Below are positions 18,541 through 49,665 of a stretch of 64,000 nucleotides of DNA, in pieces; the first letter of the stretch is position 1; the number at the start of each line of letters is the position of its first letter. The notes beneath the pieces are model-generated. The model was not told where the DNA came from. It saw nothing but the letters and a program-made list of their open reading frames with translations, and searched no databases. A program made the translations under genes and the position numbers. The DNA is taken from NCBI GenBank assembly GCA_950097015.1, contig CATNEN010000029.1, forward strand, positions 6,386,001-6,450,000, written 5' to 3'. The stretch comes from Macrostomum hystrix (taxonomy: Eukaryota; Animalia; Platyhelminthes).

Positions 18541-18860
18541 GGGAGGTCAGTGGGAGAACAGTTAACGTGTTTGCCTCTCGCACCAGAGTCCCTGAGCTCG
18601 ATTCCGCGGCGAGGCCCATTCATTTTGGGCGCAGCCGCACGGAGAAGGCTTGTGGGCTTGTCGTGCAGAGTACACTGCCTGACGATGAGAAAGTCAGGGC
18701 AGATGTACGCATCTGTGAGAGTGTGGGCCTGAGTACAGGATGTGTGCGTGTGTGCTCAGGAGTAAGCAGATTGGGCAGAATTGCCTCCTCGATGGCTGCG
18801 GGTCTGGTGTCACCAAAGGATGTGCCACTGCCCGCAGCCCTCCTGCAATTATATAATTCC
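18541..18860 (+). mobile_element. SINE family A copy, followed by fragments of family B and an inverted family A head (to about 18995)
   Basis: Family A head and body. gtgggtgtggcgtccatggactgaacagctgt matches family B. Confidence 0.75.
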
Positions 18861-20692: not shown

Positions 20693-21351
20693 TTGCACCA
20701 ATGAATTTCCAATGGAGCTGTTTAGTGCATGACTTTCACTTATCAGACTCATCGTCAGCGATCCAGTGTAACAAGACCAATGAATAGATTGTGATTCGCG
20801 GCTCTCAGAAGCAGATCATGGTCGGAGCATATGAAGCCTTTAACCGAGCGTTCTTTAACTGACAAGACAAAAAATACGCTGTCGCTTTGGACTCCGATTG
20901 CAAATTTGTTAGAAGGAACGCGAGGCTAATGATGCGGAACGGTAATAATGATGAGCTGACGTAATGAGATCTACCTGCATGCATGCCATGCACAGTTAAC
21001 CTGATCGATCTTCGCATGATTTTTTTGTCTTTGACGTGAGAACTAAAGAGTCAGCGTTGAAGCAATTTTTAGGGCACTGTGACGGAGACCTAATTTCTGT
21101 GGAATTTTCATTCCAGATCAAATATCTTAATTCGAACAAGTATAGACTTTCATCTGATGTCATGCGATCAACTGTTGTCTCTTGTCAACTGTGTGGATAT
21201 GCCAAGTTTAACTTCAACTGAATACGGAGTCAAATTCCCTCAGAAAATAAGCCCTTCTAAACTTAAAATATTTGGTCAATCAGTTTGATGGAGAAATCAA
21301 TCAGTTTGCGACTCTAGAATCTACGAATCGACATTTAGATATGTCTGTACC

Positions 21352-21675
21352 ATTATGGATTTGGGGGCGCCATTATGGATTTGGGGGCGCCATTATGGAT
21401 TTGGGGGCGCCATTATGGATTTGGGGGCGCCATTATGGATTAGGGGGCGCCATTATGGATTTGGGGGCGCCATTATGGATTTGGGGGCGCCATTATGGAT
21501 TTGGGGGCGCCATTATGGATTTGGGGGCGCCATTATGGATTTGGGGGCGCCATTATGGATTTGGGGGCGCCATTATGGATTTGGGGGCGCCATTATGGGT
21601 TTTGGGGCGCCATTATGGATTTGAGGGGCGCCATTATGGATTTGGGGGCACCATTATGGATTTGGGGGCACCATT
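21352..21675. repeat. Minisatellite, 21-bp unit (ggcgccattatggatttgggg), about 15 copies
   Basis: Directly visible. Confidence 0.95.
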
Positions 21676-22043
21676 ATCAATTAGAGCAGAAAAATGAAGA
21701 AAAGTGGTTAAATGATTAAATTTATCGACTAATAAAGCTAGGCAATCTAGAAAGCCAGGATAGTGTAAATTTTCACTGTCTATTTGCGTGTTATAAATTT
21801 TGTGATAATAACAAAGTTACGGCGGAACTCTAGCAGAGGCGAAAATAAACGAGTGCTAGTGCAAAAATCGAGAAAACTTTTACTGTCACTTACTTTTAAT
21901 GTTGCTTTGCAAAAGTTAGTCTTTTTTAGATCACCACCTGGATCACACCATCTGTCTGTAATATACAGAGTCCTAAACTACTGCATCATAAAAATCTAAA
22001 GTTCGTGCAGTTCAATAGTCTCTGCACTATTAGAGTAAAACCC

Positions 22044-30744: not shown

Positions 30745-31015
30745 GATATCTCGATTCCGAGCCACATTCATTTGTTGTTTGGGTGCTTTTCGTGCAATTG
30801 ACGCCCTTGAGGGCCAACCTCCAAGGCACAGTGAGAGTGTACACTGCCCGACGATGAGAAAGTCAGGGCAGATGTACACACCTGTGTGAGCGTATGCCTG
30901 CGTACGGTGTCTGTGTGTATGTGTGCTCAGGAGTCAGCGAAATAGGCAGAATTGCCTCCTCGCTGGCTGCGGGTCTAGTGTCACCAAATGATGAGCCATT
31001 GCCTGTAGCCTTCTT
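30745..31015 (+). mobile_element. SINE family A copy, 5'-truncated
   Basis: ctcgattccga gccacattcattt..cccttgagggccaacctccaaggcacagtgagagtgtacac.. matches the family body. Confidence 0.75.
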
Positions 31016-31949
31016 GTAAAAATTAATTCTTTGTCGCAGTGAGATACTTTGACAGCGACTTTGTTCGCATCTGGCCTTTGCCCAATTTTTTATAAACTTG
31101 AACGATTTTTTCTAATTGTTTTTTGTTGTTACAAACAGAAACAGGTACTTAAGTGTAAAAATGGAAGGAACAATTATGCTAATGAGCTTTTGCTATTAGC
31201 TTCAAGACAAGATACAATCCGAATTTTTTTAATTGGTACTAATTAAGTACTCTTCTTAATAGCAAAAGTGAAGTTGAATTGGGGAATGCGTCATTTTTCA
31301 GCTCAATATTGCGAATTAAACGGAACTCACGAATAACAGCTTCTGTAGGTTTTTGTGCAGTGTACTGCCGCGAACTACTGCTGGAATCGCATGACAGCAT
31401 ACGAGTATATTGCAAACTTATAATAAAATTCAACGCCTTATATACGAGCGTACTATCGAAGCGATTAACTTTTAACAAAATGGAATTAACCGTTGTTGGA
31501 TGATGATTCAATTCAATTGTCATTTACGAGGACTCTAAACCTTGCGATGGAAAATACGAAACCATCAGTCTATAAAGTGCTACTAAAACTTTCAGACTCG
31601 AAGTTTCAGTACATTTTTCAGACGCAAAGTTTGAAAGTTTGTGACTGTGTTTCTGAACGCACGACAACAAATTACAGTTATTTCGCGAAATCCGTTTGGT
31701 TTCGGCTCGAGACACAAGTTCGACCCATGTTTTTAGAATGAGACCTGAAGATGAAAATTCAGGCACCGGTTTGCTCCGGGTGAACAGACGCACCGACCAT
31801 GTTCAATGTGCTCGTGGCGTTTTTAATGTTAGCTGGCCCGTGCTGAGCTAGTAGGATCATCTGCGAGTGGTGGTTACCGATGCATATTCGAATAGGCCAA
31901 TAACGTTATTAAAAAACTATAATAATAATTTACAAAAATTTATTACACC

Positions 31950-32605
31950 TGCCCTAATTGGGCCATTTGTGCAGCCGAAAGAACTGCCACAGTTATTGCA
32001 CGGCGTATCTGAAAGTGTATCTTAAATTTCTGCGTACGGCTTTTCAGTCTATGGACTGGGGAGACGCCACTCGCACCCTCAATTACCGTAGCTAATAATT
32101 TCATAATATTATTACATCATTTGGTGACAGCAGACCCGCAGCCAGCGAGGAGGCAATTCTTCCCATTTCGCTGACTCCTGAGCACACAAGCACACAGACA
32201 CCGTACACAGGCACACGCTCACACAGGTGTGTACATCTGCCCTGACTTTCTCATCATCAGGCAGTATACACTTCACTGTGCCTTGGAGGTTGGCCCTCAA
32301 GGGCGTAAATTGCACGACAAGATACTTGGATACTTGGAGAGAAGCCCACAAGCCTTCTCTCCGCGCCCCAAATAAATTTGCCCTCGCCGCGAAATCGAAC
32401 TTAGGGACCGTGGTGCGAGAAGCAAACGCGTTAACCTCTCTGCTACCGATCCCCATTTACCCATTTAACAGCAGGGTAAACTGAAGCGATTCAGAGTTAA
32501 GTCTCTTACTAAAGTACACAGATTATTTCCGTGGAGTCGGGAATCGAACCCCCGACCTTCAAGTCGTGAGTCGGATGCTTTAACCGCTAGGCTACAACCC
32601 CCTCA
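31950..32605 (-). mobile_element. SINE family B (CORE-type) interrupted by a family A copy (about 32110-32453, minus)
   Basis: The family B head and CORE lie at 32455-32605 and its 3' part at 31950-32095, with a full family A element between them. Confidence 0.75.
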
Positions 32606-33281
32606 ATTATAATGAAACTTCGAATCGCCATAAATACCTTGCTGCCGAACACGAGCAGCAGGGTGGTGGTGGAGCAGACGACGATGCAGACGACCACCAG
32701 CACGAAGCGCAGCGTGACCTGGCTGTTGGGCAGCACGAAGCTGAGCGAGACTCCGATCGCGGCCATGATGAGCGTGTTGTACACACAGATGCCAATCTGC
32801 TTGCTGTCGTTCAGCGCCTCCAGCTGGACCTTGCGCGTCTCCCAGGCGAAGAAGATACCGAAGATTAAAAGCAGGCCTTTTAAAAAATACCCGAAAGCAT
32901 TTCATTTTACAAAGCGAATTCGTCGAAGGGAATTCCTGCATTCTCACTCGTGATTTTGTAAGTAGCGCAATTTTTTTAGCTTGTTGGAACTAAATTTTCG
33001 TATCACCATTTATATTTACATCAGAAAATTGTCCGAGCTGCGCTTGTGACACCGGCCGTAATGTTGAGAGACATTTTATTGCTAGTTCTAAAGCCACCTC
33101 GTTTTTCATCATCGTGCCGATAAATATTCATTCCAACACACAAAACGTTTTAAATCGACAATTAGTCAATCTAATAAAATGTATCATATTTTTTTAATTA
33201 ACGAAATATGCTCGTCAGTCCAGCGAATTATTGTTTTAACTTTTCTCGTTTCGCTCTCTAAGCCTTTACATTTAGACGCAT

Positions 33282-35624
33282 TGATGTGGAGTGTACTTCG
33301 GAATCGAGTGGGGTTGTGAGCCAGCCTAATTTTTTCCAATTTTTAGCAAGTCAATAATCGCGACCCACATAGCAGCTGGCCGCAGAACACTATCATTAAT
33401 CTTAGGGCCAGACATTGGGCGGAGGTGAATTAAGTAGCCGCCGATTCCCTTTGTCTCGGATCTGTCTAGTCCCCTGTAGGAGTGACTGATCGCGGAAATA
33501 GCAATACTGTATGGACTAGTTTAGGTTATAATTCCCCTCCAAACCGCGATCAGATTGTCGGGATCACTCATGCGTTTAGAGTGAGCTTTAATTCTTCATG
33601 TCCCTTTTCTTTACTGTAACCCGAGCCGAAGCTCGATTATGACCTTTCCCCCTTTAGATACATGTAACGACACTATAGGCAGGTCGGCGCCTGCGCTTCC
33701 CATATCCCGGCGGGATCACAATCATTGGCCGACTGCCGGCAGACGCTCCTAGTGGGGCATCTGGCGATTCTCGCCGCCGCTTCAGTGGGCAATTGGGGTG
33801 GCATTATGCCGACCCGATTCCTCGCTGACAGGCCGGCGAGCATGTGGGTTATTTTGATGAATGCGAGGTTGGCGGAGCTGCAGGACTATTTAAGAGAGCG
33901 CGCTGCGCTGCCCCTAGGGGACCACCCTTCGGACCTACCTTCCCCCGAACCTACTTTTCCGCCCCTACAACCTTTTTCCCTTGTCCGGTCCCGGAACTCG
34001 GTCCGTGGACTCTCCCCCTTCTAGGCTAGCACCTAGTCCCTGAGCCTAAGGCTCCAGATCATAGCAGCAGGCAACTACCTGCTAGTGCCCTTAAGCGCAA
34101 GCCACCTCTTTAGGTGCGCTCCAAATTGAGCCTTGAGCTCCCTGCAGTCTGGCCCCTTGCCAACTGTACTTAGAAATTCCTCACCTTTTCTCCTGTTCAT
34201 TTGCATTCCCCCGCGAGATCGACGGCCTGCAGCCTGTCAACCAGCGTATTCAGATAAGTAACCCGCGCAGCGGACTGTTATTGCTATCCCTAAGGGATTT
34301 ACTACTTAGCTAGTGGGCAATAAGGGCGAGGGCAGGGATTTGTTTTTAGCCTAATAAACCATTTATTATTTGACTGCCACTTTTAATAACTTAGGCCAAT
34401 TTTATAACAACTAAACCTTTCCTTATCATGCTATTCTCTTCTGTTTATTTTATCGCTAGGCAGCCCTCGGTCATGAGTGGCTAACTCATTAGGGGGTGGG
34501 CTCTGGCGATGCCTAGCTGAAAGCTGCGGCAGGAGGACAACTGTGAGCGCGCATGAGAGTAATATGGAGCTAGGGATTTGCGAGCTAAATGCGGGATGTA
34601 GCGTGTGCACTTCTGCCTACGAGGTGGGGGATTCCTTGGCCGGCTTTCCTCACTCTCTCGGCGGGTTCCAGTGTATGCGTCAAGTTCCTTTGCCAATTTG
34701 AATTCTCCCTCTTTTCCCCGCCTTTCGCAACCGCGGCCATGGAAGCGAGAGGCGTGATCTAATAATTTCCTGCTTGCATAATCACTCAGCCAGTGTTCAG
34801 CTTAATCTCTCCTGCCTCTGTTCTCCTCAACTCACACAGAATCGGCTTGCTAGTTATCTAATGAATAGGCTGCAGTCTAATGTACGGAATGTGTCTAATG
34901 TCTCATGAGTAGGATTCTGGCTATGGATTTCTCATTCGGGTTCGGAGTACCACCTTTCTAGACCACTGTAGCGCAGTTTCAGGAATCCCCTTGTGAGGCG
35001 TGACTCGATCCATTCTGGGGTTCTCACCCTAGTCTAAAACGGAAGTTACAGAATGCTCTATTTTTCGGCTTGTCTAAGATCTGTGTGACAAACTGGGAGC
35101 TGCGAGCTCCGGGGACCCAAGTTCCCAAATGTCTGCGGTGGCCACGTAGGCGCATTGGGTGGTGGCGCTACCTTCGATCATTATCCGCTTTGCCGATAGC
35201 CTTTCCGCATTTCTAAGACAAGAGCCTAGGCCGAGTCGACCACTGCTACCAAAGTTAGGAGTCAGTTACGAACATGCTACTGATGACAGTAGGCTATCTA
35301 GCCCTGTCCTATTCGCTTGCGGGTAGTCCGACATCTATTTAGACTTTTAGCCGGTTTCGAGCACTGCTTGGGGTGGGCACGGCAGTCATGCCTGTGGCCC
35401 ATGGGTTGGGTGGGACTGGCCAGCCTGAGGCCAATAGGACCACTCACTTGCATCCTTTGTACCGCCTCATCTCTCCCTTCATCTCTCCCTTCATCCCTCC
35501 CTTCGTCATCCCTCTCTGCGACAACTCGCGGCAGCAGCGATCGACCTCCGACTCTATCGTCGTTTTCCACACTCCTATCTTTCATGAGGGCGGTCATCGG
35601 CTAGCAAAGACCCGCACTATTTCA
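33282..35624 (+). repeat. 5' LTR (2343 bp)
   Basis: Identical to the 3' LTR wherever spot-checked. The ORF track gives identical peptides at +7855. Confidence 0.95.
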
Positions 35625-35625
35625 A

Positions 35626-35645
35626 TGGTGGCATCGAGGTGGGAT
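35626..35645 (+). promoter_or_regulatory. Primer-binding site, tRNA-Leu-like
   Basis: TGGTGGCATCGAGGTGGGAT lies 1 nt after the LTR. It is close to the complement of a eukaryotic tRNA-Leu 3' end (..ATCCCACCGCTGCCACCA), but not a perfect match. Confidence 0.75.
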
Positions 35646-36929
35646 CTAGAAAGGGCGCGAAACGAACTTGATTTTCAATTATTAGTTTAGCGCCGCAGAT
35701 TTCTGTGGTAGCTTGCCGAAAGGGCTCCTTCTGGATTTCATTTTCCGTATGCCGAAATCTTATCTCAGTTCTAGTGACTGTCAATTAATTTCCGAACAGT
35801 TGCAATTTGGTTTCAATTTAATTTAGGCTTTTGTTAGAGTTTCCAAAATTCTGATTAGTGACTTTCTACTATGAGTAGGCTGTGTGAGCGGACTTCATGC
35901 TAGAGTGTCTTCGGGTTAGTGGCTGCTGCAGGAGTCGGGGACTGTCTGTGGGGTTTTCCCGCGTGATTGATCTGGGAGGGGCCATTCTTAACGAGGGACC
36001 GGGCAACGCCGTTCGGCCTTCTAACCGAGCGAGGGGAGCCCCCGGCAATGCAGCCGGGAATCGATGACTCGCCGAGCACCGGGGATTGGTTCTCTTGGGC
36101 AGCTTGCGGGCCTGCTTACGTGTACCTGATTTTGAAAGTGTCACATAACTTTGACCAAGTCTGACTTTGGTGGGGAACAGTTAGGGAGGTGGGACTTCTG
36201 AGGGAGGTCTAGCGACCCCCGTGCCCGCCTCTCGAAACTGCCTACTTCAAGTATGGGCTAGAATTCGGTCGGCACGTTTTTCTAAGAGATTCTTTGAGGG
36301 GTTTTCTAAATGGGGTTGCCAGGCTTTAGCCATGGACTCCTATCCGAGCGAGATCCCAGGTATATCCCCCCTGGGCTTCCCAGTCTCGTTAATCGCGAGG
36401 GGGGCCCCCGGCAATGCAGCCGGGAACCGATGACTCCCCGAACGAGTCGGGGATTATCCCTTCTCTGAGTATCTTATTGAGGCGTGTACTTTCCAAGGTA
36501 GGGTGATAGGCTGTTGCAGGCGCAAGCTTGCAGTAGTACTGACCCCGCCGTACCTATAGTGCAACAGTCCGCTATAGGGTTGCAGAACGAGTGCTAAGTT
36601 AAAACCTAGACTTCTATGTCCCAAACTTAAGTGCGCGCAAACAGTTGTCAGTAGCCAAGGCTGGAAGCAAAGCTAGCCAGGGCCCTGGGCCCTTTTCTCT
36701 CTCACTGATCTTTGATCATTTTTGCAGCAGGGTTGCTCTCTAGGAGTAGGGAACTCGCCGCATCATTAACCAGGGCTGGATTTGACAGCTCAGGCTCGTT
36801 TCTTTTCCCCCCTGCACGATCTCCAGTCGTGATCTGTGTTTTCCTTTTCCTCCCCTCCCCCATTGTTGCATTAGCGACAGACCCCCCTCTTTTTCATTCG
36901 CAAAATCCTCATTCCTCTTTTGGCCGAAA

Positions 36930-37988
36930 ATGTCCGACCAGGAGGGTGAGGTGGTGGAAGTGGTTGGAGTCAACCGCCCACCCAGAGGCCGCGCCGCAGC
37001 TGCGGCGCGCGCCGAACCCCCAGCGGCTGCTGCAGCACAGCAAGCCGACCCCGTGGAGCGCCTGGCGCTGCTTTTAGAGCGGCTAGAGGTGCGACGACCC
37101 CGGAACCACCGGGTCAAAGTTGCTATTGAACCCCTCGAATCCCGAAAGGGTTCCTTCCCCCTCTGGCTTCGCCGATTTAACCTGAAGCTGGAGGCGGAGG
37201 GTGTCGAATCCGAGGAGGAGAAAATCCTCACCCTCCTCGCTCACCTGAGTGGCGAGCCCCTCACCGAAGCGCTAGGGTTGCCCCGCCGGGTGACCTACCT
37301 TAGATTCGTGCAGGATCTGACCGAGGCCCTTAGTGGCGCCTGCACCCCCTACGCCCGGCTGCTGAGCGGGCGTAATTTGAAGCAAGGACGGGACGAGACG
37401 TACCCCGCCTTCGCCGATAGACTCAGAACAGCGGCCCTGCAGGCCACCCCCAACGGCCACGGTGTGCACTTCGAGCGCGCCTTGCTGGCCTCATTTATGG
37501 AGGGGATAGTGGCCCCACCCGAGGTGTTGGCACCCATCATGCGGATGGAATTTGCCACGGCTGAGGCCGCCGCCGCCGAGCTGCGTGCTGCCACGCAGGC
37601 GCATGAAATGGCGGTGGAGCGGGACCCTCGCCGGCGAGTGCGCCAAATCAGGACAGGTTTGGATGACGAACCGGACCAGCCAGAGCCGCAGCACGGGCTG
37701 CTGGCAGAATTAACCAAGGTGACCCAGCAGCTAGCCGAGATTTCTCAGCAGCTGCGGGAAGCCAAGCCCAACTCCATCCCCCCTCTCTGCCCACACCCAA
37801 ATGTGCATCAGTGGCACCCGAAGCGTGTAGAACACGGGGCTGCTGGCGGAGCGAATCGTGAGGTGGCGAAGGGAAATGGGAACGGGGCCGCCAATTGGAG
37901 GCAGTCCCACGGCCCCGAGACCCAGCCCGCAGCTCGACAGTCGGAGCGGCGGCAGCCGCCGCCTCCGACCTCCGAGAAGTCCGAGTGA
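36930..37988 (+). CDS. gag: Gag (capsid-like) protein, 352 aa
   Basis: Pattern FPLWLRRF..EEKILTLLAHLSGE..LKQGRDETYPAFADRLRTAA..FMEGI is typical of invertebrate Ty3/gypsy Gag. Position is downstream of the PBS. No CCHC knuckle. Confidence 0.82.
   Translation: MSDQEGEVVEVVGVNRPPRGRAAAAARAEPPAAAAAQQADPVERLALLLERLEVRRPRNHRVKVAIEPLESRKGSFPLWLRRFNLKLEAEGVESEEEKILTLLAHLSGEPLTEALGLPRRVTYLRFVQDLTEALSGACTPYARLLSGRNLKQGRDETYPAFADRLRTAALQATPNGHGVHFERALLASFMEGIVAPPEVLAPIMRMEFATAEAAAAELRAATQAHEMAVERDPRRRVRQIRTGLDDEPDQPEPQHGLLAELTKVTQQLAEISQQLREAKPNSIPPLCPHPNVHQWHPKRVEHGAAGGANREVAKGNGNGAANWRQSHGPETQPAARQSERRQPPPPTSEKSE
37871..37917 (+). promoter_or_regulatory. Candidate -1 programmed ribosomal frameshift signal
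   Basis: In-phase slippery heptamer G_GGA_AAT (37871-37877), a 5-nt spacer, and an 8-bp stem CGGGGCCG/CGGCCCCG (37883-37890/37910-37917). Confidence 0.75.
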
Positions 37989-38419
37989 ATGCACTCGGCC
38001 GAGTCCCCACCCGAGTGCGAACCCGCCCAAATCGCTCTGAGCAGCTTAGTGAGGTGTGGGTCGCCTTGGAAGTGGGAGGGACACCCCTAGACCTCCTCAT
38101 CGACACAGGGTCTATGGTAAATGTGCTCCCGGACTCGTTGTCATCAATCTTTCAACACTACCCATTCGAACCCCCGCAATTTTCTCTTTTTGCTTATAAT
38201 GGAACACCCATTGTTGCACAGGCGCAGGTCAGGGTCAAATTACAGGTTGGCACCGAAGCGCTGGACACCGTGTTCTTAGTGGTTGAGGGCGACTGCTCTC
38301 CCCTGCTCGGTGCCTCCTGGTTGGCTCATCATCATGCCATCGTTGACTTTGACTCGCGCCACTTAATCATATATCGTCAATTTCTCCCCTTTTCACTCAG
38401 GCGGAAGGCTAAATTTTAA
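37877..38419 (+). CDS. Retroviral-type aspartic protease, in the -1 frame relative to gag
   Basis: LDLLIDTGSMVNVLP (catalytic DTG) and the C-terminal PLLGASWL motif (LLG.DWL-like). The ORF stops at 38419. Confidence 0.88.
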   Translation, partial: WERGRQLEAVPRPRDPARSSTVGAAAAAASDLREVRVNALGRVPTRVRTRPNRSEQLSEVWVALEVGGTPLDLLIDTGSMVNVLPDSLSSIFQHYPFEPPQFSLFAYNGTPIVAQAQVRVKLQVGTEALDTVFLVVEGDCSPLLGASWLAHHHAIVDFDSRHLIIYRQFLPFSLRRKAKF

Positions 38420-41136
38420 ATGAGGGGCACCGTGACCTAGGGTCAATCACCATTTTCTTTCCTCGCCCACCCCACCCCCTCCTCTGGTCGTCGACTTATT
38501 TAAGTAAGGGCTGGGAAAGCCAAGAGGATCCCAGGACAGGAAGAGTTGGAGCACCAGCTGGTCATGCGCCGGATCGGGATGCCAGAGATCACCCTGCGGT
38601 CAGCGGCAGACCCGGATTGGCGTGAGTGGCTCCACGGACATCGCATCGTCGAAGAGCCACCGCCCGGGGACAGCACGCTCGGCCGCATGGTGAGAGAGAT
38701 GGAAGGCGAAGAAGCTAGCGAGGGACCGGTGGAAAGTACGCCCATCAAGGAGGCGGCCGAAGAATAGGAAAGCGCAAGGTAGGGTCAACAGAGGTAGTGA
38801 CCGTAGAATAGTAGGAACAGGACCACCATCTGTTAGGCCCCTGTCCCCTGTTCCCCCTTTGTCCCCTTCCTTTTTCCTCTCCCCTTTAATAATAATGCGC
38901 ACTCTGCACTTTTCGCTCCTTTTCTCCTATTGTGCATGTTTTCCCTTTTCATCTAAAGCCGCCTTGGCACAAAAATCTCACACAAAAAAAATTCTTATAA
39001 TTTTAGCCAAAACCACAAAAATACACATAGTGGGGTGAAATTCCCCTGATACTTTTTTTACATAAGATGCTTATCTAATCGTAGCAAACTAGGGTATGCA
39101 CCTTCTTTTCTTAAAGAGCATTTTACTTTAATCGCACCACATCATGCATGGCACCTCTGCCTTATCTTGTTCATGTTGGTGGGTCTGTGGGAGTTCAATT
39201 TAGGACAACTTCTAATTTAGGAGGGACACCAACCCGCTAAAGTGAGCGGGGTGGTATGCTTTGGGAAATTCTATGCTTTCTTTAAGGGTGGGAAGGCGGT
39301 TCAAATCAAAAAAGGCCATCTCGGCGCCAAAACCTCTTAAAAACTTATATAAACTAATCAAAATCCAAAAACATATTTAGTGGGGTGAAATTCCCCTTCG
39401 TAAGAATTTTCGCATGAAACATTGTTGTATTAACTGCCGCAAACTAGGGTTCGCACCTACTTTTCGCAAACTTGCTTATCTTACATGTTCTCTATGCTTG
39501 GTTTCGGGAGTTTAGCTATACCGGCTTCTATTTAGGGGGTATACCAACCCGCTAAAGTGAGCGGGGTGGTATGTTTCGGGAATTTTCTTCTTAATGTTTG
39601 TTTAAAGAGTGGGCGGTCGTAAATCAAGAGGCCGGTAGGATCAGGTATTCAAACTCTGGGAGGGAAAACAATCTGGCTGTTTCAATGAACGACAGATTTT
39701 AAAAATGATAACTTTTCCTTTGTTAGGATTAGAGGGGTCAGAAAAAAAAACATTATTTGGGAGCCAGAAGTTAGCAGCTGGGCATTCAAATCTAGGTACC
39801 TGGAGGGGTAGAATAGTAATAAATCGCATGAATTAAGGTTCCAGACGTTTCAAAACTCATTGACAGTCTATCAGTTAGTTTTTTTGGTTACTAGGCGGTT
39901 GTAAAACTTGAGCAGTAATGTTCATCTAGGAATAGAGCGGGTAATTGCATTTCAAATAACTCACAATGTAATCTATCTATATTTGGGGGAGGGTTTGTCA
40001 CAGTTCGGGTCGGGGTCAATTCCAAATCAGTGGGACATTTCAGAGTGCCGTGGGTAAAAAGGGAATTCGATTTATCCTAACTATTATGACATAACCCTCG
40101 CAATTATCCTTAATAACCGGCCTTGGGGGGCCGAGTAGAAGCCAAATCACTCACCTCTCTCCTTCAGGCAGTTGCTCGGCCATGATCGCGGGTAGCAGTC
40201 GACAAAAATAATAATGGCAGGATAAATCCAGGAAGTTCGCTGGCAGAGATTAGCTTAGTTGATGTTTTAGATAATGTGTCGAAATAGGTTTAGAGATAAC
40301 AGGCTTGGAGTCAATGGGGCGTCAAGTGTTTGCTTTTATAGGGCTAATTTAGGGAGACGTGGCGGTCTAACCGCCAGCCAATGGGAGCAAAGTGGGAATT
40401 CCGGGCAGAACCAGTTTAGGGGGCTCATGGTAACAGTTTAGTTGTTGGGGCCCTGACCTTTTCGGTGAGGAGACACCTCGGCCGGCAACAGCATCACAAG
40501 CGGCCTGAGCAGCGGTTTCCCCAGCTGCGACCAGCTGCAGCGCCGATTGGGCCGCGCGCAACGGCTAGGCAACCGGCCCGACGAGAATTTTCGGGCCCGG
40601 CCAGCTGAAAACACCTGGGCGCGCGGCGAATCAGAGGCTACCACGGCCCGGCAACGGAATCGGGAAGGCGCGAACGGACCAACCAACCCGGAGCCACCTG
40701 GGGAAGAGCACGGCCGGACCCTCGGACTTAAGGAGAAAACGGCCGGAGCCTCCCGGGATTGCGCAACCGAGACCAAGCCGGGCAGGGAAAGACGGGGACA
40801 GCTGCAGCCACCTGGAGGAGAAGGCGAGCCGGGACACGGCACCCCTGGGCAACGAGAACAACCTTAACTCAGCCGGAATGCGCACCCACCTCCCCTCAGG
40901 ACTCTATCCCTTAGTCGCTAGGGGCGCCGACCTTTACACTCTCGCACACAATCTATTTATAGCAGTATTGTTACGTACGATGACCTAGGATTTCTTCTCT
41001 AGCGGTTTTTCTTCTTAGGATTCTTTACGGTATGCAGTAGGGTAATGTAAGTTTTTTTGCCCCCTCGATTCGCGGGACACCCCACTACTGACAGTAAGCA
41101 CGTAAGTGTCTTACGTGAAAGTGAGCGAAGGTGGAG

Positions 41137-43479
41137 TGATGTGGAGTGTACTTCGGAATCGAGTGGGGTTGTGAGCCAGCCTAATTTTTTCCAATTTTTA
41201 GCAAGTCAATAATCGCGACCCACATAGCAGCTGGCCGCAGAACACTATCATTAATCTTAGGGCCAGACATTGGGCGGAGGTGAATTAAGTAGCCGCCGAT
41301 TCCCTTTGTCTCGGATCTGTCTAGTCCCCTGTAGGAGTGACTGATCGCGGAAATAGCAATACTGTATGGACTAGTTTAGGTTATAATTCCCCTCCAAACC
41401 GCGATCAGATTGTCGGGATCACTCATGCGTTTAGAGTGAGCTTTAATTCTTCATGTCCCTTTTCTTTACTGTAACCCGAGCCGAAGCTCGATTATGACCT
41501 TTCCCCCTTTAGATACATGTAACGACACTATAGGCAGGTCGGCGCCTGCGCTTCCCATATCCCGGCGGGATCACAATCATTGGCCGACTGCCGGCAGACG
41601 CTCCTAGTGGGGCATCTGGCGATTCTCGCCGCCGCTTCAGTGGGCAATTGGGGTGGCATTATGCCGACCCGATTCCTCGCTGACAGGCCGGCGAGCATGT
41701 GGGTTATTTTGATGAATGCGAGGTTGGCGGAGCTGCAGGACTATTTAAGAGAGCGCGCTGCGCTGCCCCTAGGGGACCACCCTTCGGACCTACCTTCCCC
41801 CGAACCTACTTTTCCGCCCCTACAACCTTTTTCCCTTGTCCGGTCCCGGAACTCGGTCCGTGGACTCTCCCCCTTCTAGGCTAGCACCTAGTCCCTGAGC
41901 CTAAGGCTCCAGATCATAGCAGCAGGCAACTACCTGCTAGTGCCCTTAAGCGCAAGCCACCTCTTTAGGTGCGCTCCAAATTGAGCCTTGAGCTCCCTGC
42001 AGTCTGGCCCCTTGCCAACTGTACTTAGAAATTCCTCACCTTTTCTCCTGTTCATTTGCATTCCCCCGCGAGATCGACGGCCTGCAGCCTGTCAACCAGC
42101 GTATTCAGATAAGTAACCCGCGCAGCGGACTGTTATTGCTATCCCTAAGGGATTTACTACTTAGCTAGTGGGCAATAAGGGCGAGGGCAGGGATTTGTTT
42201 TTAGCCTAATAAACCATTTATTATTTGACTGCCACTTTTAATAACTTAGGCCAATTTTATAACAACTAAACCTTTCCTTATCATGCTATTCTCTTCTGTT
42301 TATTTTATCGCTAGGCAGCCCTCGGTCATGAGTGGCTAACTCATTAGGGGGTGGGCTCTGGCGATGCCTAGCTGAAAGCTGCGGCAGGAGGACAACTGTG
42401 AGCGCGCATGAGAGTAATATGGAGCTAGGGATTTGCGAGCTAAATGCGGGATGTAGCGTGTGCACTTCTGCCTACGAGGTGGGGGATTCCTTGGCCGGCT
42501 TTCCTCACTCTCTCGGCGGGTTCCAGTGTATGCGTCAAGTTCCTTTGCCAATTTGAATTCTCCCTCTTTTCCCCGCCTTTCGCAACCGCGGCCATGGAAG
42601 CGAGAGGCGTGATCTAATAATTTCCTGCTTGCATAATCACTCAGCCAGTGTTCAGCTTAATCTCTCCTGCCTCTGTTCTCCTCAACTCACACAGAATCGG
42701 CTTGCTAGTTATCTAATGAATAGGCTGCAGTCTAATGTACGGAATGTGTCTAATGTCTCATGAGTAGGATTCTGGCTATGGATTTCTCATTCGGGTTCGG
42801 AGTACCACCTTTCTAGACCACTGTAGCGCAGTTTCAGGAATCCCCTTGTGAGGCGTGACTCGATCCATTCTGGGGTTCTCACCCTAGTCTAAAACGGAAG
42901 TTACAGAATGCTCTATTTTTCGGCTTGTCTAAGATCTGTGTGACAAACTGGGAGCTGCGAGCTCCGGGGACCCAAGTTCCCAAATGTCTGCGGTGGCCAC
43001 GTAGGCGCATTGGGTGGTGGCGCTACCTTCGATCATTATCCGCTTTGCCGATAGCCTTTCCGCATTTCTAAGACAAGAGCCTAGGCCGAGTCGACCACTG
43101 CTACCAAAGTTAGGAGTCAGTTACGAACATGCTACTGATGACAGTAGGCTATCTAGCCCTGTCCTATTCGCTTGCGGGTAGTCCGACATCTATTTAGACT
43201 TTTAGCCGGTTTCGAGCACTGCTTGGGGTGGGCACGGCAGTCATGCCTGTGGCCCATGGGTTGGGTGGGACTGGCCAGCCTGAGGCCAATAGGACCACTC
43301 ACTTGCATCCTTTGTACCGCCTCATCTCTCCCTTCATCTCTCCCTTCATCCCTCCCTTCGTCATCCCTCTCTGCGACAACTCGCGGCAGCAGCGATCGAC
43401 CTCCGACTCTATCGTCGTTTTCCACACTCCTATCTTTCATGAGGGCGGTCATCGGCTAGCAAAGACCCGCACTATTTCA
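41137..43479 (+). repeat. 3' LTR (2343 bp), preceded by an imperfect polypurine tract (41117-41136)
   Basis: Direct repeat of 33282-35624. GAAAGTGAGCGAAGGTGGAG lies immediately upstream. Confidence 0.95.
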
Positions 43480-46400
43480 GCATGAATTTTATAACCCGTC
43501 GATGCGGCAGAACCTTTTAGGTGTTTCATTCTCTACCTAATCTGCCTCGTTTGCGTGTCTCCATGGTGGTATTGCAAGCGCTGTTCCAATGCTGCTTTGA
43601 TGCACTAACCTTTAATTCAAAGGAGAATTCCATTCCACATGGCTGCCATTGCGGACTGGCAAATCTCGAGACGAGGCATACTGATAGTTCCAGGTTTCGG
43701 ACTTTCCTGAAACATTTGTTGTAAGCAATTCATGTTACAGCTAAAGGTAATGCAACGATAGCACACTTCGGTAGGAAGTTGGCCTAGCTGCAGCTGCATT
43801 GGATCCAGGAAAAACCACAGCATGCGAATAAGTGCATCCAACAGCAGAAGAAGGCCAACTACAGACAGCAGGTGCCAGTCTTTAATTGCCTGAAAATCAT
43901 TTTTAGGCGTGCTCTTTGCATACGGGCGGATTAAAAAAACTATAACTCTAGAAGACAAAAAATATATTTACCTGAAAGGGTGTCGAAAACTCCGTACATT
44001 AAACCTTTATTTGAAAGTCTTTTAACACTCAACGCCAAGCCACCTGCAGTTAACAGTGTGATCCGTACTATGAGGCACAGACCGCATCTAGACACCTACC
44101 TTTTGTGTACTCTAAAGCAAGTTAAAATATCAATTAGTTACTCTACTAATTAAAAAGATCTAACTCGTATTTAATTTTTGCGCCATTCACTAAGCTGACT
44201 AAGCATGGGATTAAAACATCATTCAGAAATTTACATTTTCACCAAAATTTTCTCACCACCCGCTTGAGCCGCTTGTTGGTGAAGATGACGTGAACCCGCC
44301 AGGTCTTCACGAACATGGCCCCGAATGCGCACGAGTATCCAGCAGCGAGGCAGCAGGTCTGCGTCCAGCACAGAGACACTCCAGTGTAGGTGCCTCCGTT
44401 CAGAGCCATCGCGATGCAGCTGCAGTATCCGAGCACGCAGCCGAGAGCGATCACGAGGTTCACGTTCGGAGAGCTCAGTTTGATCAGCTTCAGGTTTCGG
44501 TACTTCAGGTTGACGCACACCGACACGACGGCGAGTCCGATTCCCACGGCAGACAGGACGAGACAGACGGTGATGGCCGGCTGGCTGACTGTGACTCGCT
44601 CGTTCAGCACCACCGGAGAGTCGATTGGAGGCTTCTCACCTGCGAACTGCAGAGTCCGCTGCCACACCGTGATGTTTGTGGCAGTGTCGAAGTTCGCCAC
44701 TGGGACGCCCACATTGTCTGTGCATGAGTGAAAGATTTGAGTGAAAACCCTCGGGACGCGAAATGAGCCGAATCATGGCAGAAAAAGTAATGGGCTCATT
44801 TAATTTCGGATGCTGCGTCTGCTTTCGAGTACGTTCATCGTTCGTCTTTTGAGGTTTTTTATCAACAGGAAAACCTTGAAGAATAGAAACCACGATAGAA
44901 ACGAGCATAAACACGAAAGATAAAAGCCAAGAGGTGAAAGGTGAGGGTTTCAGTTGTCCCCAAATTCGACCTTCTCGGTTTGTGAAACTGTACTAGCAAG
45001 CTGTTCTCACCTCAACGCCGTTGAAGGCCTGACTGCGGATATTTTTCATAAAGGAGGCTTGTCTTAAAGGAGCTGTTGCCAAGATCCGGGATCGAACTGT
45101 ACGGGTATCGCTTTAGAGTGTCTTTGATGGCCAAGGCTGCCGTCATCAAAGTATCGAAAACCCGAGCAGCGAACTTGCTGTTGGCCGTGGTCAGCACACC
45201 GTACAGTGCCTCATAGGCAGCCTTGATGTCGCCCATTGTCTGGATTGTGACAAGCGTATTTGCGCTGCATGAAGGAAACTGGAACTGCTGATAGGTATAA
45301 AAACCGCATGCAGTATCGATATCTTCCACATGTTCGTCAATGATTCTGCCAAACTTAGACAACCCAAAGCATGTCCTCAGAGCCTTCTACATCGTCTTCA
45401 AGAAGCTGAGCAGCTCGTGAAAATTTCCTACTTTCAATATGGACGCACTAGACCAGTGCTGCTTGGCGGTGGATGGTAATTGGGACTCGCCATTGGGACT
45501 GCAACATATGAGGTAGTTTAGCAACTATTTCTACTCACTTTCATCGTTGAATGATGTCCCTGGGCGAACTGGTGAACAGGCCTTTGTACAGTATTGAAAT
45601 ATATCTTACAGCAATGATGCTTTCGAAGGCTTCACCAACCTGAAGGTTTACTTTCGGCAAATGAGACAGGACAGTGCGAGATCTGCGAGCCAATACTCCT
45701 TGATTTCTTCTGCGCAGATCGCTTCCAATCTAATTCAGGATAAAATAAGTAGAGCTCTACGTACAGGATAGATCTGGTCGGCCTCCGTGATCAGCAGACC
45801 AATCTTGCGCCAGTTGTGCTTCAATAGAATCTGCACAATCTCCTCGTTGTAGAGTCCATGAGTCATCAGCCGCCGGCTGTAGGTTGTGTACTGGGTCTTA
45901 TCCGACAACAACGGCGAAGCATTTGAGTAGGCTGGAACCCCATCGGGCATAAGGATTTCATTGGTAAACTCTGTGTGGCTCCATTCTTATCAAAAAATTT
46001 TAATGAAGTCCATCTATGTGCTTTTTGTCTCTTGGCCATCTGCCGCAATGGTAACAACTCACCATGGGCACGTAGTACAACTTGCAAACTTCGGCCACCA
46101 CCTGAGACTGCTGAGAGAACGTTATGCCAAGAATCATCGCTTTATTCGATAAATAAAGCCATCGATAGCCATCGTAGCCATCGATAAACACATTAGAAGC
46201 AGTGCCCGTGTCTTGCTTAAAATTTTATAAATATTTCGACAAGTTGTTTCGTCAGAAACTTCTAATAGGAAACTTGATGACATAAAAAACCCAAAGACTT
46301 ACATCAATAGCGCAGTGGTGGTGAATGTGGAGCTTGAAGTCCGAGAACATGTCTGTCAGGTTGTTGATTAGCGGTAGTAAGGCTCGCATTGCGAGTTCAG

Positions 46401-46825
46401 GGAAATTTTGCCGTCCTGTGATTGGCGCCACGGTGCAGATGTGGAGCAATGTGACTTCAGTTCGGTTGTCAGTTGTCAGACGGGCAACAGGAGCAGCAGC
46501 CAGCTCCGAAAGATTCGCATGGCAAAAGTGAAATCGAACCGAAGAAAGTAACTGTGGTACTCTATTTAACAGTTTGTGCCAGGAGATAGATAAAGGCTAG
46601 CGCCTATTGGACTGGGTTTCCAAGCCAGTAATTTCACAAGACATTAAAAATGTGAAAAATGCATAAAAATTAAGTCCGGAGATGTTCCAACGCAACTTAT
46701 ATATTTTAAAAGCAATTGAGGCAGACCAAATACTTGCTTGCTCTATCTATGTCATCTCAATAACATACGAGCGTACGAGTGGTGGCCGAGTATATTGCAA
46801 GTGCTTTTGTAACATCCCTATTTCT

Positions 46826-48503
46826 GCAGTTTAGCAAGAATCTAGTGCAGTTCAGTAAGAATCTAATGCAGTTTAGCAAGAATCTAATGCAGTTTAGCAA
46901 GAATCTAGTGCAGTTTAGCAAGAATCTAATGCAGTTCAGTAAGAATCTAATGCAGTTTAGCAAGAATCTAGTGCAGTTTAGCAAGAATCTAGTGCAGTTC
47001 AGTAAGAATCTAATGCAGTTTAGCAAGAATCTAGTGCAGTTTAGCAAGAATCTAATGCAGCTTAGCAAGAATCTAGTGCAGTTTAGCAAGAATCTAGTGC
47101 AGTTCAGCAAGAATCTAATGCAGCTTAGCAAGAATCTAGTGCAGTTCAGCAAGAATCTAGTGCAGTTTAGCAAGAATCTAATGCAGCTTAGCAAGAATCT
47201 AGTGCAGTTCAGCAAGAATCTAATGCAGCTTAGCAAGAATCTAATGCAGTTCAGCAAGAATCTAATGCAGCTTAGCAAGAATCTAGTGCAGTTATGCAAG
47301 AATCTAATGCAGCTTAGCAAGAATCTAGTGCAGTTTAGCAAGAATCTAGTGCAGTTTAGCAAGAATCTAGTGCAGTTTAACAATAATCTAGTGCAGTTTA
47401 ACAAGAATCTAGTGCAGTTTAGCAAGAATCTAGTGCAGTTTAGCAAGAATCTAGTGCAGTTTAACAATAATCTAGTGCAGTTTAACAAGAATCTAGTGCA
47501 GTTTAGCAAGAATCTAATGCAGTTTAACAAGAATCTAATGCAGTTTATCAAGAATCTAGTGCAGTTCAGCAAGAATCTAGTGCAGTTTAGCAAGAATCTA
47601 GTGCAGTTTAGCAAGAATCTAGTGCAGTTTAGCAAGAATCTAGTGCAGTTTAGCAAGAATCTAGTGCAGTTCAGCAAGAATCTAATGCAGTTTAACAAGA
47701 ATCTAGTGCAGTTTAACAAGAATCTAGTGCAGTTCAGCAAGAATCTAGTGCAGTTTAGCAAGAATCTAATGCAGTTCAGCAAGAATCTAATGCAGTTTAG
47801 CAAGAATCTAGTGCAGTTTAGCAAGAATCTAGTGCAGTTTAGCAAGAATCTAGTGCAGTTTAGCAAGAATCTAGTGCATTTTAGCAAGAATCTAATGCAG
47901 TTTAGCAAGAATCTAGTGCAGTTTAGCAAGAATCTAGTGCAGTTTAGCAAGAATCTAATGCAGTTTAGCAAGAATCTAATGCAGTTTAGCAAGAATCTAA
48001 TGCAGTTCAGCAAGAATCTAATGCAGTTTAACAAGAATCTAATGCAGTTTAGCAAGAATCTAATGCAGTTTAGCAAGAATCTAATGCAGTTTAGCAAGAA
48101 TCTAATGCAGTTTAGCAAGAATCTAATGCAGTTTAGCAAGAATCTAATGCAGTTCAGCAAGAATCTAATGCAGTTTAGCAAGAATCTAATGCAGTTTAGC
48201 AAGAATCTAATGCAGTTTAGCAAGAATCTAATGCAGTTTAGCAAGAATCTAATGCAGTTTAGCAAGAATCTAGTGCAGTTTAGCAAGAATCTAATGCAGT
48301 TTAGCAAGAATCTAGTGCAGTTTAGCAAGAATCTAGTGCAGTTTAGCAAGAATCTAATGCAGTTTAGCAAGAATCTAGTGCAGTTTAGCAAGAATCTAAT
48401 GCAGTTTAGCAAGAATCTAGTGCAGTTTAGCAAGAATCTAGTGCAGTTTAGCAAGAATCTAATGCAGTTTAGCAAGAATCTAGTGCAGTTTAGCAAGAAT
48501 CTA
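46826..48503. repeat. Minisatellite, 21-bp unit (gcagtttagcaagaatctagt), about 80 copies
   Basis: Directly visible, with point variants (aat/agt, ttt/ttc/ctt). Confidence 0.97.
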
Positions 48504-49439
48504 ACGCGTGTGACACTTTTTTGGTCACTTTTAGCTTTTAGTTTTTGCATGTGGACAGAAAAGCTACTTTATTTTAATTTTGAATTAAGAGTTTCACCTT
48601 TTTGAAGACTTTCACAAAGGCATCCGTCCTTGGGGCCTCGTAAAATACGTCAAAGGGAGTAGAGTCGGATGTGATCCGGGCTGCATTGTGATAAAAGGGC
48701 GTTGCCTCTTCCGTGAGCTGTTTTTGGAAGCCAGGTAGACATTGTTTTTGTGTGTGCCGATCGGTCAATTAGCAGGTTTGAAATATCTAAGCCTTTTGCT
48801 TTATGTAATCATCGTGTAAGGCCTTTCGATCCAACAACCAGTAGAAACCACCACGCTTGAATATTGCACATTTGACTGGACTGAATAATTTCACAGCTTT
48901 TGGGAAGCAGCCGTGGTTGATAATTGGTTGTGGTCGCAAAATTATTAAGCGTCTCATTTTTTAAACCGTTACACTCATTTTTGCTACTCTGCAATTTTAA
49001 CATCAGCACAATTCACACCATAAGCTGCGTGCACCCAGTCAAGTCATTGAAAGTCAAGGAGCAGCAGATCCGGTGTACATAACCTCGTAACGATCAATGC
49101 AGTTGCATAAGTCTACACACTACAAACTATCTCACCAATAGTGGGCTTCAATCGAAGAGAGTATTACTACTGCGAGTACTATGGAATGCTAAATCAATAC
49201 AAAGTATGTCTGTTTATTAACAGTAGACTGGGGAAAAAACAACGGGGATATTTCAAATAGCCACTGCGCACTTCAGGATTTGCACAGGAAGTGTGATATA
49301 AGAGGTAACGATATAATTAACAATTATTTGTGATTCTGAAAGTTTTTTTATCATGGCGATTGGCCGAATATTTTGGGAGATACATAAAATAGAAATAATT
49401 GGGTATTTGAAATGCCCCAATTGGGTATTTGTAGCTATT

Positions 49440-49665
49440 GCGCGGCGCATCTTAAGGCTGTGTATGATCAGTCCATGGACAGGGGAGAGGCCCCATCCAC
49501 CCTCAATCACTCCAGCTAATCCTGACACCCATTTAACAGCTGGGTGAGCTGAAGCAATGTAGAGTAAGTGTCTTGCTAACGGATACAAATTTTTCAAGGT
49601 GAGTCGAGAAGCGAACCCCCGACCTTCAAGTCATGAGTCCGACGCTCCTAGCACTAGGCTACGAG
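49440..49665 (-). mobile_element. SINE family B (CORE-type) copy
   Basis: gtccatggac..cccatttaacagctgggtgagctgaagc..cttgcta..gcgaacccccgaccttcaagtcatgagtccgacgct matches the family. Confidence 0.75.

What the first reader, a model, noticed from the sequence alone, without database searches (positions are those of the whole stretch)
33282..43479. Young 10.2-kb LTR element with giant identical LTRs that encodes only Gag and protease
All cis signals are intact (TG..CA 2343-bp LTRs, GCAT TSD, tRNA-Leu-like PBS, PPT-like tract), and gag and pro are uninterrupted and coupled by a frameshift signal. After the protease stop (38419) there are about 2.7 kb with no RT, RNase H or integrase remnants, filled instead by duplicated structured modules. 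This looks like a stable semi-autonomous design rather than a decayed copy: it would make and mature its own capsid and borrow RT and integrase in trans. It is conceptually similar to plant TR-GAG/LARD elements and to the gag-protease layout of domesticated PEG10. LTRs make up 46% of the element. Apparent LTR identity implies very recent transposition, so a helper should be active. Gag lacks a CCHC knuckle, so RNA selection may rely on another mechanism.
Basis: partly seen in the sequence, partly recalled or inferred. Interest (0 to 1): 0.85.

Follow-up and report, generated by a model that had tools for sequence, protein, structure and literature searches.

The report
Gag-protease-only LTR retrotransposon, flatworm-like genome
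A freshly inserted 10.2-kb jumping gene makes its own capsid protein and protease but has no reverse transcriptase or integrase, so it must borrow them; this layout is known from wheat, and only one copy could be examined here.

Summary
The two 2343-bp LTRs (33282-35624, 41137-43479) are 100% identical, end in TG..CA and are flanked by a 4-bp GCAT duplication. A TGG-initiated PBS-like site follows the 5' LTR, and a purine tract precedes the 3' LTR. The gag ORF is intact (36930-37988), and a -1-frame retropepsin ORF runs to 38419. They are coupled by GGGAAAT plus a GC-rich stem, at the position where the closest relative has GGGAAAC. No RT, RNase H or integrase trace was found in the 2717 bp after the protease stop. 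Gag is a Ty3/gypsy-type capsid protein: its model matches PNMA2, Arc and Ty3 capsids. Its nearest kin are only 29% identical. They all keep a CCHC knuckle, and those whose contigs extend past gag carry a large pol ORF. This copy has lost the knuckle.

The host looks like a flatworm, not human. The element lies antisense in an intron of a class C GPCR gene.

Best reading: a non-autonomous ("semi-autonomous") Ty3/gypsy derivative mobilised in trans. The same layout is described in wheat (RLG_Sabrina_SA, RLG_WHAM). Whether it is a stable lineage or a one-off deletion could not be tested, because no searchable collection holds this genome. Interest is moderate.

The parts
33278..33281 (+). 5' copy of the 4-bp target-site duplication (GCAT)
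   Evidence: GCAT lies directly before the 5' LTR and directly after the 3' LTR
33282..35624 (+). 5' LTR, 2343 bp, TG..CA; one AATAAA at 34353; a 12-bp microsatellite at 35467-35504
   Evidence: 100% identical to the 3' LTR; no other copy in the window
35626..35646 (+). PBS-like site, starting with TGG one base after the LTR
   Evidence: the priming tRNA was not identified
35625..36929 (+). 1.3-kb untranslated leader with a duplicated ~60-nt GC-rich module (36029-36087 and 36395-36455, 88% identical)
   Evidence: no Pfam hit on its ORFs
36930..37988 (+). gag ORF, 352 aa: capsid-type Gag without a zinc knuckle
   Evidence: weak Gag_p24_C hit; 8 relatives, best 29% identity; relatives carry Retrotrans_gag plus CCHC; model matches PNMA2, Arc, dArc1, Ty3 and MLV capsids
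37871..37917 (+). -1 frameshift signal: slippery GGGAAAT (37871-37877), 5-nt spacer, 8-bp G:C-rich stem (37883-37890 paired with 37910-37917)
   Evidence: the relative L001 has GGGAAAC in the aligned KGN/QGN columns, followed by its own GC-rich stem
37862..38419 (+). protease reading frame (-1 relative to gag); retropepsin domain about 38063-38326, active-site D-T-G at 38102-38110; stop codon at 38417-38419
   Evidence: gag-asp_proteas 23 bits, below the 28-bit cut-off; DDI1, ASPRV1; aligns to the PR part of L001 pol, E 5e-8
38420..41136 (+). 2717-bp non-coding 3' domain with no pol remnant. It contains an old tandem duplication (about 38990-39345 and 39340-39660, 78% column identity) with perfectly conserved islands, including a hairpin at 39221-39262 and 39536-39577
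   Evidence: no domains; duplication; hairpin z -2.2 and -3.2; no Rfam family
41117..41136 (+). polypurine-like tract abutting the 3' LTR
41137..43479 (+). 3' LTR, 2343 bp
43480..43483 (+). 3' copy of the target-site duplication (GCAT)
32628..44712 (-). host class C GPCR (7tm_3) gene whose intron holds the element in antisense orientation. Flanking exon blocks are 44242-44712, about 43801-43896, about 43604-43677 and 32628-32878
   Evidence: a tandem paralogue without the element lies at 50849-52649

Best explanation
This is one copy of a non-autonomous ('semi-autonomous') LTR retrotransposon descended from Ty3/gypsy-type elements, in a flatworm-like animal genome.

How it most likely works (inferred unless marked otherwise):
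- Its genomic RNA would be translated into Gag.
- In a minority of translation events, a -1 ribosomal slip at GGGAAAT, stimulated by the downstream GC-rich stem, would give a Gag-protease fusion. The element can therefore build and mature its own capsid shell.
- It encodes no reverse transcriptase, RNase H or integrase (shown).
- Reverse transcription would be primed at the PBS-like site and at the purine tract. Integration, which left the 4-bp GCAT duplication, must have been carried out by enzymes from another, autonomous element of the same genome.
- The insertion is recent: there are no differences between the 2343-bp LTRs (shown).
- It lies antisense in an intron of a class C GPCR gene (shown).

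The cis signals, the ORFs, their homology, the absence of pol and the conserved frameshift site are shown here. Trans-mobilisation, particle formation and any role of the conserved 3' hairpin modules (perhaps in packaging) are inferred. I lean about 60:40 towards a propagating Gag-protease-only lineage over a one-off deletion derivative, but I could not test this.
For: - LTR structure, target-site duplication, PBS-like site and purine tract.
- ORFs and frames.
- Gag homology: 8 relatives among 1.84 billion representative proteins. Seven of the eight (plus P0009, a cluster mate of the top hit) are gag-sized; the eighth is 2114 aa. All carry CCHC.
- Gag model: mean pLDDT 65, with the central blocks (about residues 80-230) mostly above 85. 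Its top PDB matches are all retroelement capsids: PNMA2, Arc, dArc1, Ty3, MLV.
- Protease: D-T-G-S motif, Pfam retropepsin families at E 9e-5, PDB hits to DDI1 and ASPRV1, and alignment to the PR segment of a relative's pol.
- Relatives are canonical. L001 has gag followed by PR, RVT_1 and RT_RNaseH. A JGI contig has a 304-aa gag followed by a 1299-aa ORF.
- Frameshift: there is a single slippery heptamer in the overlap. It lies in the same alignment columns as GGGAAAC in L001 and L002, and each is followed by a stable GC-rich stem of different sequence.
- No pol remnant.
- Precedent for the layout: wheat RLG_Sabrina_SA and RLG_WHAM (PMC9744471).
Against: - Only one copy was seen, so propagation of this architecture is not demonstrated.
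- Both the protease and Gag Pfam scores are below the curated cut-offs.
- The protease structure model failed (pLDDT 38).
- The tRNA that would prime at the PBS was not identified.
- Gag has lost the CCHC knuckle and several arginines that its relatives conserve. Only 27 of 49 well-conserved columns are retained. This could mean relaxed constraint rather than a working protein.
- Identity of the LTRs could also come from gene conversion or from assembly.
Confidence: 0.8

Rival explanations
1. One-off deletion derivative. An autonomous element with a long 3' untranslated region lost its RT, RNase H and integrase segment in a single clean deletion or template switch, and that defective RNA was then mobilised once in trans. 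On this reading there is no pol-less lineage.
For: - All detectable relatives whose context is visible are canonical gag-pol elements.
- The protease ORF ends only about 15 residues after the domain, as expected if it runs into unrelated sequence.
- Only one copy lies in the 64-kb window, with no solo LTR.
- The intact gag, protease and frameshift site fit a very recent loss.
Against: - Not a single pol-derived piece remains.
- Gag has diverged strongly and has lost its knuckle, which fits an element that has relied on a helper for some time.
- A random window is more likely to sample an abundant family than a unique accident (inference).
- None of these points is decisive.
Confidence: 0.35
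2. Assembly artefact or LTR homogenisation. The perfect LTR identity reflects a collapsed or duplicated assembly, or gene conversion, so the element may be neither young nor arranged as shown.
For: Zero differences over 2343 bp is what an assembler could produce from one consensus. No reads are available.
Against: The LTR ends are exact. The duplication does not extend a single base beyond TG..CA. Matching 4-bp duplications flank the element. The PBS-like site and the purine tract sit exactly at the inner LTR edges. The flanks continue as exons of one host gene.
Confidence: 0.05
3. Pol is present but was missed, because it is extremely divergent, split by introns or encoded elsewhere in the element.
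For: tblastn with the relative's pol did not even detect the protease, so that one test is insensitive.
Against: RVT_1, RNase H and rve are among the most easily detected Pfam families. In 38380-41160, 97% of bases are covered by some + strand piece of 25 aa or more, and all those pieces were scanned at E up to 1 without any such hit. The region has no ORF above 139 aa. In the relative, the RT scores 116 bits.
Confidence: 0.03
4. A domesticated host gene of the PEG10 type (gag-protease with a -1 frameshift) rather than a mobile element.
For: The coding layout is the same, and the slippery site is of the same type as the GGGAAAC that I recall for PEG10 (from memory, not tested).
Against: It has identical LTRs, a target-site duplication, and PBS-like and purine tracts. 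It lies antisense inside another gene's intron. A paralogous gene copy lacks it.
Confidence: 0.02

Closest known systems
Wheat RLG_Sabrina_SA and RLG_WHAM ('semi-autonomous' Gypsy elements; Wicker et al. 2021, PMC9744471)
   Same: They are LTR retrotransposons of Ty3/gypsy descent whose only intact coding capacity is GAG plus a protease domain. RT and integrase are absent, the elements are large (about 8 kb), and they are presumed to use an autonomous partner.
   Different: They are plant elements with thousands of copies and a proposed partner (RLG_Wilma). Here there is one copy in an animal genome, no partner was seen, gag and protease lie in two frames joined by a -1 frameshift, and Gag has no zinc knuckle. 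No sequence comparison with the wheat families was possible.
TR-GAG elements of plants (Chaparro et al. 2015, PMC4350172)
   Same: They are non-autonomous LTR elements that keep a gag ORF and lack RT and integrase.
   Different: TR-GAGs are under 4 kb and carry only gag. This element is 10.2 kb and also encodes a protease.
LARD elements (large retrotransposon derivatives); from general knowledge
   Same: Both are large non-autonomous LTR elements with long LTRs and a long non-coding internal domain.
   Different: LARDs encode no protein. This element has intact gag and protease ORFs.
Canonical Ty3/gypsy elements related by Gag and protease (Logan contigs L001 and L002; JGI contig with P0004)
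   Same: Gag is homologous (27-29% identity) and so is the protease (26%). The -1 frameshift site of type GGGAAAY sits at the same alignment position.
   Different: The relatives have a CCHC knuckle. L001 continues into RT and RNase H, and the JGI contig carries a 1299-aa ORF after gag. This element has none of these.
PEG10 (domesticated gag-protease gene of mammals); from general knowledge
   Same: Both encode Gag and an aspartic protease coupled by a -1 frameshift on a GGGAAAY-type heptamer.
   Different: PEG10 is a single-copy host gene without LTRs. This is a mobile-element copy with LTRs and a target-site duplication.
Mouse non-autonomous ERV derivatives (IAP 1-delta-1, ETn, VL30, MaLR; PMC6466679)
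   Same: They are animal LTR elements that spread using proteins supplied in trans, and they often out-number their helpers.
   Different: None is described there as encoding exactly Gag plus protease. ETn and VL30 encode nothing useful, and IAP 1-delta-1 makes a gag-pol fusion.

Membership tests
LTR retrotransposon (structural definition) | Two direct long terminal repeats ending in TG..CA | tested here: met
   2343 bp, 100% identical, TG..CA
LTR retrotransposon (structural definition) | Short target-site duplication flanking the element | tested here: met
   GCAT on both sides (4 bp)
LTR retrotransposon (structural definition) | Primer-binding site complementary to a tRNA 3' end next to the 5' LTR | tested here: inconclusive
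   a TGG-initiated 21-nt site lies one base after the LTR. No host tRNA set is available to match it. The two weak tRNA-like Rfam hits in the window; the one I read (32532-32601) is a SINE-like tRNA head unrelated to the PBS.
LTR retrotransposon (structural definition) | Polypurine tract next to the 3' LTR | tested here: met
   17 of 20 purines at 41117-41136
Ty3/gypsy (Metaviridae) | pol with the domain order PR-RT-RNase H-integrase | tested here: not met
   RT, RNase H and integrase are absent from the element. The order PR-RT-RH is seen only in the relative L001. The element is therefore a derivative by descent, not a complete member.
Ty3/gypsy (Metaviridae) | Gag with the retroelement capsid fold, homologous to Ty3/gypsy gag | tested here: met
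   relatives hit Retrotrans_gag, PF03732; PNMA2, Arc, Ty3 capsid matches, probability about 1, E 4e-3 to 0.1
Ty3/gypsy (Metaviridae) | CCHC zinc knuckle in the nucleocapsid part of Gag (usual, not universal) | tested here: not met
   all three Cys columns are lost and only the His column is kept
Semi-autonomous GAG-Pro LTR elements (Sabrina_SA/WHAM type) | Intact gag and protease coding capacity | tested here: met
Semi-autonomous GAG-Pro LTR elements (Sabrina_SA/WHAM type) | RT and integrase absent | tested here: met
Semi-autonomous GAG-Pro LTR elements (Sabrina_SA/WHAM type) | The whole population of copies shares the pol-less structure, and an autonomous partner co-exists | not testable with these tools
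   The host genome is in none of the collections. Gag and protease searches found nothing closer than 29% identity.
TR-GAG | A single gag ORF only, and an element shorter than 4 kb | tested here: not met
   A protease ORF is present and the element is 10,198 bp
LARD | Internal domain without coding capacity | tested here: not met
   gag and protease ORFs are intact
PEG10-like domesticated gene | No LTRs; fixed single-copy host locus | tested here: not met
   LTRs and a target-site duplication are present. A paralogous gene copy lacks the insertion.

The most novel reading that the evidence does not exclude
This is a sample of a propagating animal (flatworm) lineage of Gag-protease-only LTR retrotransposons. 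On this reading the lineage has replaced pol by a structured non-coding domain, whose perfectly conserved duplicated hairpins would serve as packaging or dimerisation signals. Its knuckle-less Gag would co-assemble with a helper's Gag-Pol. That would be an independent, animal-side origin of the 'semi-autonomous' strategy so far described in cereals.
Probability: 0.3. Interest if true: 0.55.

Novelty: new member of a known kind. Interest (0 to 1): 0.38.

Why it matters
Non-autonomous LTR elements that still make their own capsid and protease show how retroelement communities can divide labour. Gag is needed in bulk, while RT and integrase are needed in small amounts and can be shared. So far this is documented mainly in cereal genomes. 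A young copy in an animal, with an intact and conserved frameshift signal, would offer a tractable case for three questions: whether such elements compete or cooperate with their helpers, how a Gag without a zinc knuckle selects RNA, and what RNA modules replace pol. As it stands, it is one well-formed copy, useful for annotating the genome and as a marker of recent retrotransposition activity in it.

Tried and rejected
- The look-up of encoding contigs with the exact Gag: nothing on record.
- The search for homologous proteins with Gag and with the protease ORF: both blank. That tool only sees proteins of 0.55-1.75 times the query length, so I relied on the full HMMER scan of representatives instead.
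- The search for related loci with alignment A1: failed because no stretch was conserved enough.
- Gag as a single protein against metagenome, viral and prokaryotic genome contigs: blank.
- An exact scan for the conserved hairpin motif in metagenome contigs: blank.
- Rfam at gathering threshold and at E up to 1: nothing relevant in the element.
- tblastn with the relative's pol: no remnants, but it also missed the protease, so it counts as a weak test.
- AlphaFold model of the protease from a 3-row alignment: pLDDT 38, so it was unusable and not searched.
- The sigma-70 and terminator scan of the LTR is not meaningful for a eukaryote.
- I looked for a paralogous 'empty site' at 50.8-52.6 kb. 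The exons align at 97-99.8%, but the intron holding the insertion does not align, so it gives no empty-site proof.
- I first read the degenerate knuckle as Cys-to-His substitutions. The alignment columns show this is off by one residue, so I dropped that reading.
- The argument that the old internal tandem duplication proves an old pol-less lineage was rejected. The duplication could have sat in the 3' untranslated region of an autonomous ancestor.
Full report
**Observation**

An exact comparison shows two direct repeats of 2343 bp, at 33282-35624 and 41137-43479. They have no mismatch, and the match extends not one base beyond either end. Each repeat begins with TG and ends with CA. GCAT lies immediately outside both ends, which is a 4-bp target-site duplication.

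One base inside the 5' LTR, a 21-nt site beginning with TGG occupies 35626-35646 and looks like a primer-binding site. A tract with 17 of 20 purines (41117-41136) abuts the 3' LTR. The element is 10,198 bp and the LTRs make up 46% of it. Nothing else in the window matches the LTR, so there is no solo LTR or second copy nearby.

**Coding capacity**

The only long ORFs with homology are these two:
- gag, 36930-37988, 352 aa;
- a frame open from 37862 to the stop at 38417-38419, which is -1 relative to gag.

*Gag.* It hits Pfam only weakly (Gag_p24_C, E 0.002). A full HMMER scan of 1.84 billion representative proteins found eight relatives, the best at 29% identity. Seven of the eight, plus P0009 (a cluster mate of the top hit), are gag-sized proteins; the eighth (P0008) is a 2114-aa Macrostomum protein. 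All have a CCHC zinc knuckle, and most give weak Retrotrans_gag (PF03732) hits. Two come from the flatworm Macrostomum lignano.

An AlphaFold model built on the 8-row alignment has mean pLDDT 65, and the central blocks (about residues 80-230) are mostly above 85. Its best PDB matches are all retroelement capsids: PNMA2, Arc, dArc1, Ty3, MLV and HTLV CA. Foldseek probability is about 1, and E-values are modest at 4e-3 to 0.1. Gag is therefore a real Ty3/gypsy-type capsid protein.

*Protease.* The ORF has the D-T-G-S active-site motif (38102-38113). It matches the retropepsin families gag-asp_proteas and Asp_protease_2 below their cut-offs (23 bits against 28). It matches DDI1 and ASPRV1 among solved structures. 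It aligns over residues 66-170 to the protease part of a relative's pol (26% identity, pairwise E 5e-8). A structure model of the protease failed (pLDDT 38) and was not used.

**Frameshift signal**

Within the 127-nt overlap, the only heptamer of the form X XXY YYZ in the gag frame is GGGAAAT at 37871-37877. An 8-bp G:C-rich stem (37883-37890 paired with 37910-37917) starts 5 nt downstream. The region folds better than shuffled sequence (z -2.2 and -2.5).

The closest relative (Logan contigs L001 and L002) has GGGAAAC as the only such heptamer in its gag/pol overlap. It sits in the same alignment columns (KGN here, QGN there). It is followed by a GC-rich stem of different sequence. Heptamer and position are conserved while the stem sequence differs, which is good evidence for a functional -1 frameshift.

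The two ORFs were searched separately.

**What is missing**

The 2717 bp from 38420 to 41136 contains no ORF longer than 139 aa. These searches were run:
- Pfam at E up to 1 on every + strand stop-to-stop piece of 25 aa or more; in 38380-41160, 97% of bases lie in some such piece.
- Pfam on the longer - strand pieces and on the longer leader ORFs upstream of gag.
- tblastn with the relative's pol (a weak test, because it also missed the protease).

No RT, RNase H or integrase match appeared. By contrast, the relative's pol scores 116-120 bits for RVT_1 and RT_RNaseH in the order PR-RT-RH. Another relative, on a JGI contig, has a 304-aa gag followed by a 1299-aa ORF. The ancestral state of this group is therefore a canonical gag-pol element, and this copy lacks everything after the protease. 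Its protease ORF stops about 15 residues after the domain.

**Gag without a knuckle**

No CCHC-type motif exists in any frame of the element. In the alignment, the three Cys columns that are invariant in the relatives are Q, P and a gap here. Only the His column is kept. Of 49 columns on which at least five of six relatives agree, this Gag keeps 27. These include the hydrophobic core positions, but several conserved arginines are lost. This fits either a distinct, diverged lineage or partly relaxed constraint.

**Non-coding domains**

The 3' domain holds an old tandem duplication, about 38990-39345 and 39340-39660, with 78% column identity and several indels. Inside it three islands are perfectly or nearly conserved. 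They include a 20-nt and a 31-nt stretch that are identical in both units.

The 31-nt island forms the core of a hairpin, at 39221-39262 and 39536-39577. The hairpin is more stable than shuffled sequence (z -2.2 and -3.2). No compensatory changes are available to prove it. The small hairpin in the 20-nt island is not more stable than chance.

The 1.3-kb leader has its own duplicated GC-rich module (36029-36087 and 36395-36455). Rfam knows none of these modules. A role in packaging or dimerisation is conjecture. The duplication does not date the loss of pol, since it could have been part of an ancestor's 3' untranslated region.

**Context and host**

The window is eukaryotic and rich in repeats. 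A doublecortin-domain ORF at 5071-5799 (-) is closest to a Macrostomum lignano protein (47% identity), and two Gag relatives are from that species. The host is therefore probably a flatworm or a similar invertebrate. I do not take it for human.

The element lies on the + strand, between exon blocks of a - strand class C GPCR gene of the 7tm_3 family. Those blocks are 44242-44712, about 43801-43896, about 43604-43677, and 32628-32878. The element is thus intronic and antisense. A tandem paralogue at 50849-52649 has nearly identical outer exons and lacks the element. Its intron does not align, so it gives no empty-site proof.

**Interpretation**

The anatomy is that of a non-autonomous Ty3/gypsy derivative that can make and mature its own capsid but must obtain RT, RNase H and integrase in trans. 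Identical LTRs and an intact target-site duplication show a recent integration. With zero differences in 2343 bp, the upper age bound is roughly 3/(2 x 2343 x rate), and the rate is unknown. A helper was therefore active recently.

This layout is already described. [quoted passage not shown] TR-GAG elements (PMC4350172) and LARDs are less close. My literature searches turned up no animal element described with exactly this coding content. The library is not exhaustive.

**What stays open**

I could not test whether this is a propagating lineage or a one-off. No collection available here holds this genome or a close relative. I lean towards a lineage for three reasons: there is no pol trace, Gag is diverged and knuckle-less, and a random window is more likely to sample an abundant family. 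I put that at only about 60%.

**Verdict**

The element is a new member of a known kind, and interest is moderate.

Noticed in passing
window 25245-25745(-), 44242-44712(-), 52095-52649(-); also 32628-32878 vs 50849-51097, and 44252-44740 vs 52096-52584: There are tandem paralogues of a class C GPCR (7tm_3) gene. The outer exon blocks of two copies are 97.6% and 99.8% identical. The middle exons are only about 77% identical and the introns do not align. This looks like patchy gene conversion or very uneven constraint.
   Followed up: partly
window 5071-5799 (-): A single long ORF has two doublecortin (DCX) domains. Its best database match is a Macrostomum lignano protein at 47% identity, which is the main clue to the host lineage.
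   Followed up: partly
window 286-1248, 1491-2380, 7237-8022, 9048-10125, 11735-11970, 13876-14400, 21350-21677, 22449-22998, 46825-48503, 53538-54203, 58673-60467, 62445-62776, 62898-63609: The window has an unusually high density of minisatellite arrays, with periods of 12-99 bp and up to 80 copies. The roughly 600-aa ORFs on both strands at 46757-48605 are artefacts of the 21-bp array, so their many Pfam hits (Mce4_CUP1, Talin and others) are spurious.
   Followed up: partly
window 13258-13478, 32458-32600, 49433-49662, 50501-50742: These are copies of a tRNA-derived SINE-like repeat. Two of them reach the Rfam tRNA gathering score (30 bits) at 32532-32601(-) and 50671-50740(-). ARAGORN calls no tRNA gene in the window.
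   Followed up: partly
window 3568-3877, 12102-12451, 18538-18859, 30778-31029, 32114-32449, 51138-51448, 26725-26845: This is another interspersed repeat family of about 300 bp, 78-93% identical between copies. It is unclassified.
   Followed up: no
window 62238-63698 (+): A glutamine-rich, repeat-built ORF of 486 aa (CAG/CAA-rich units of 33-99 bp) has no Pfam match. It could be a coding low-complexity exon or just a repeat.
   Followed up: no
window 38504-38764 (+): An 87-codon open frame (73 aa from its first start codon, at 38546) lies just downstream of the protease stop. Its translation is acidic and has no detectable family. It could be an accessory ORF of the element or chance in GC-rich sequence.
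   Followed up: partly
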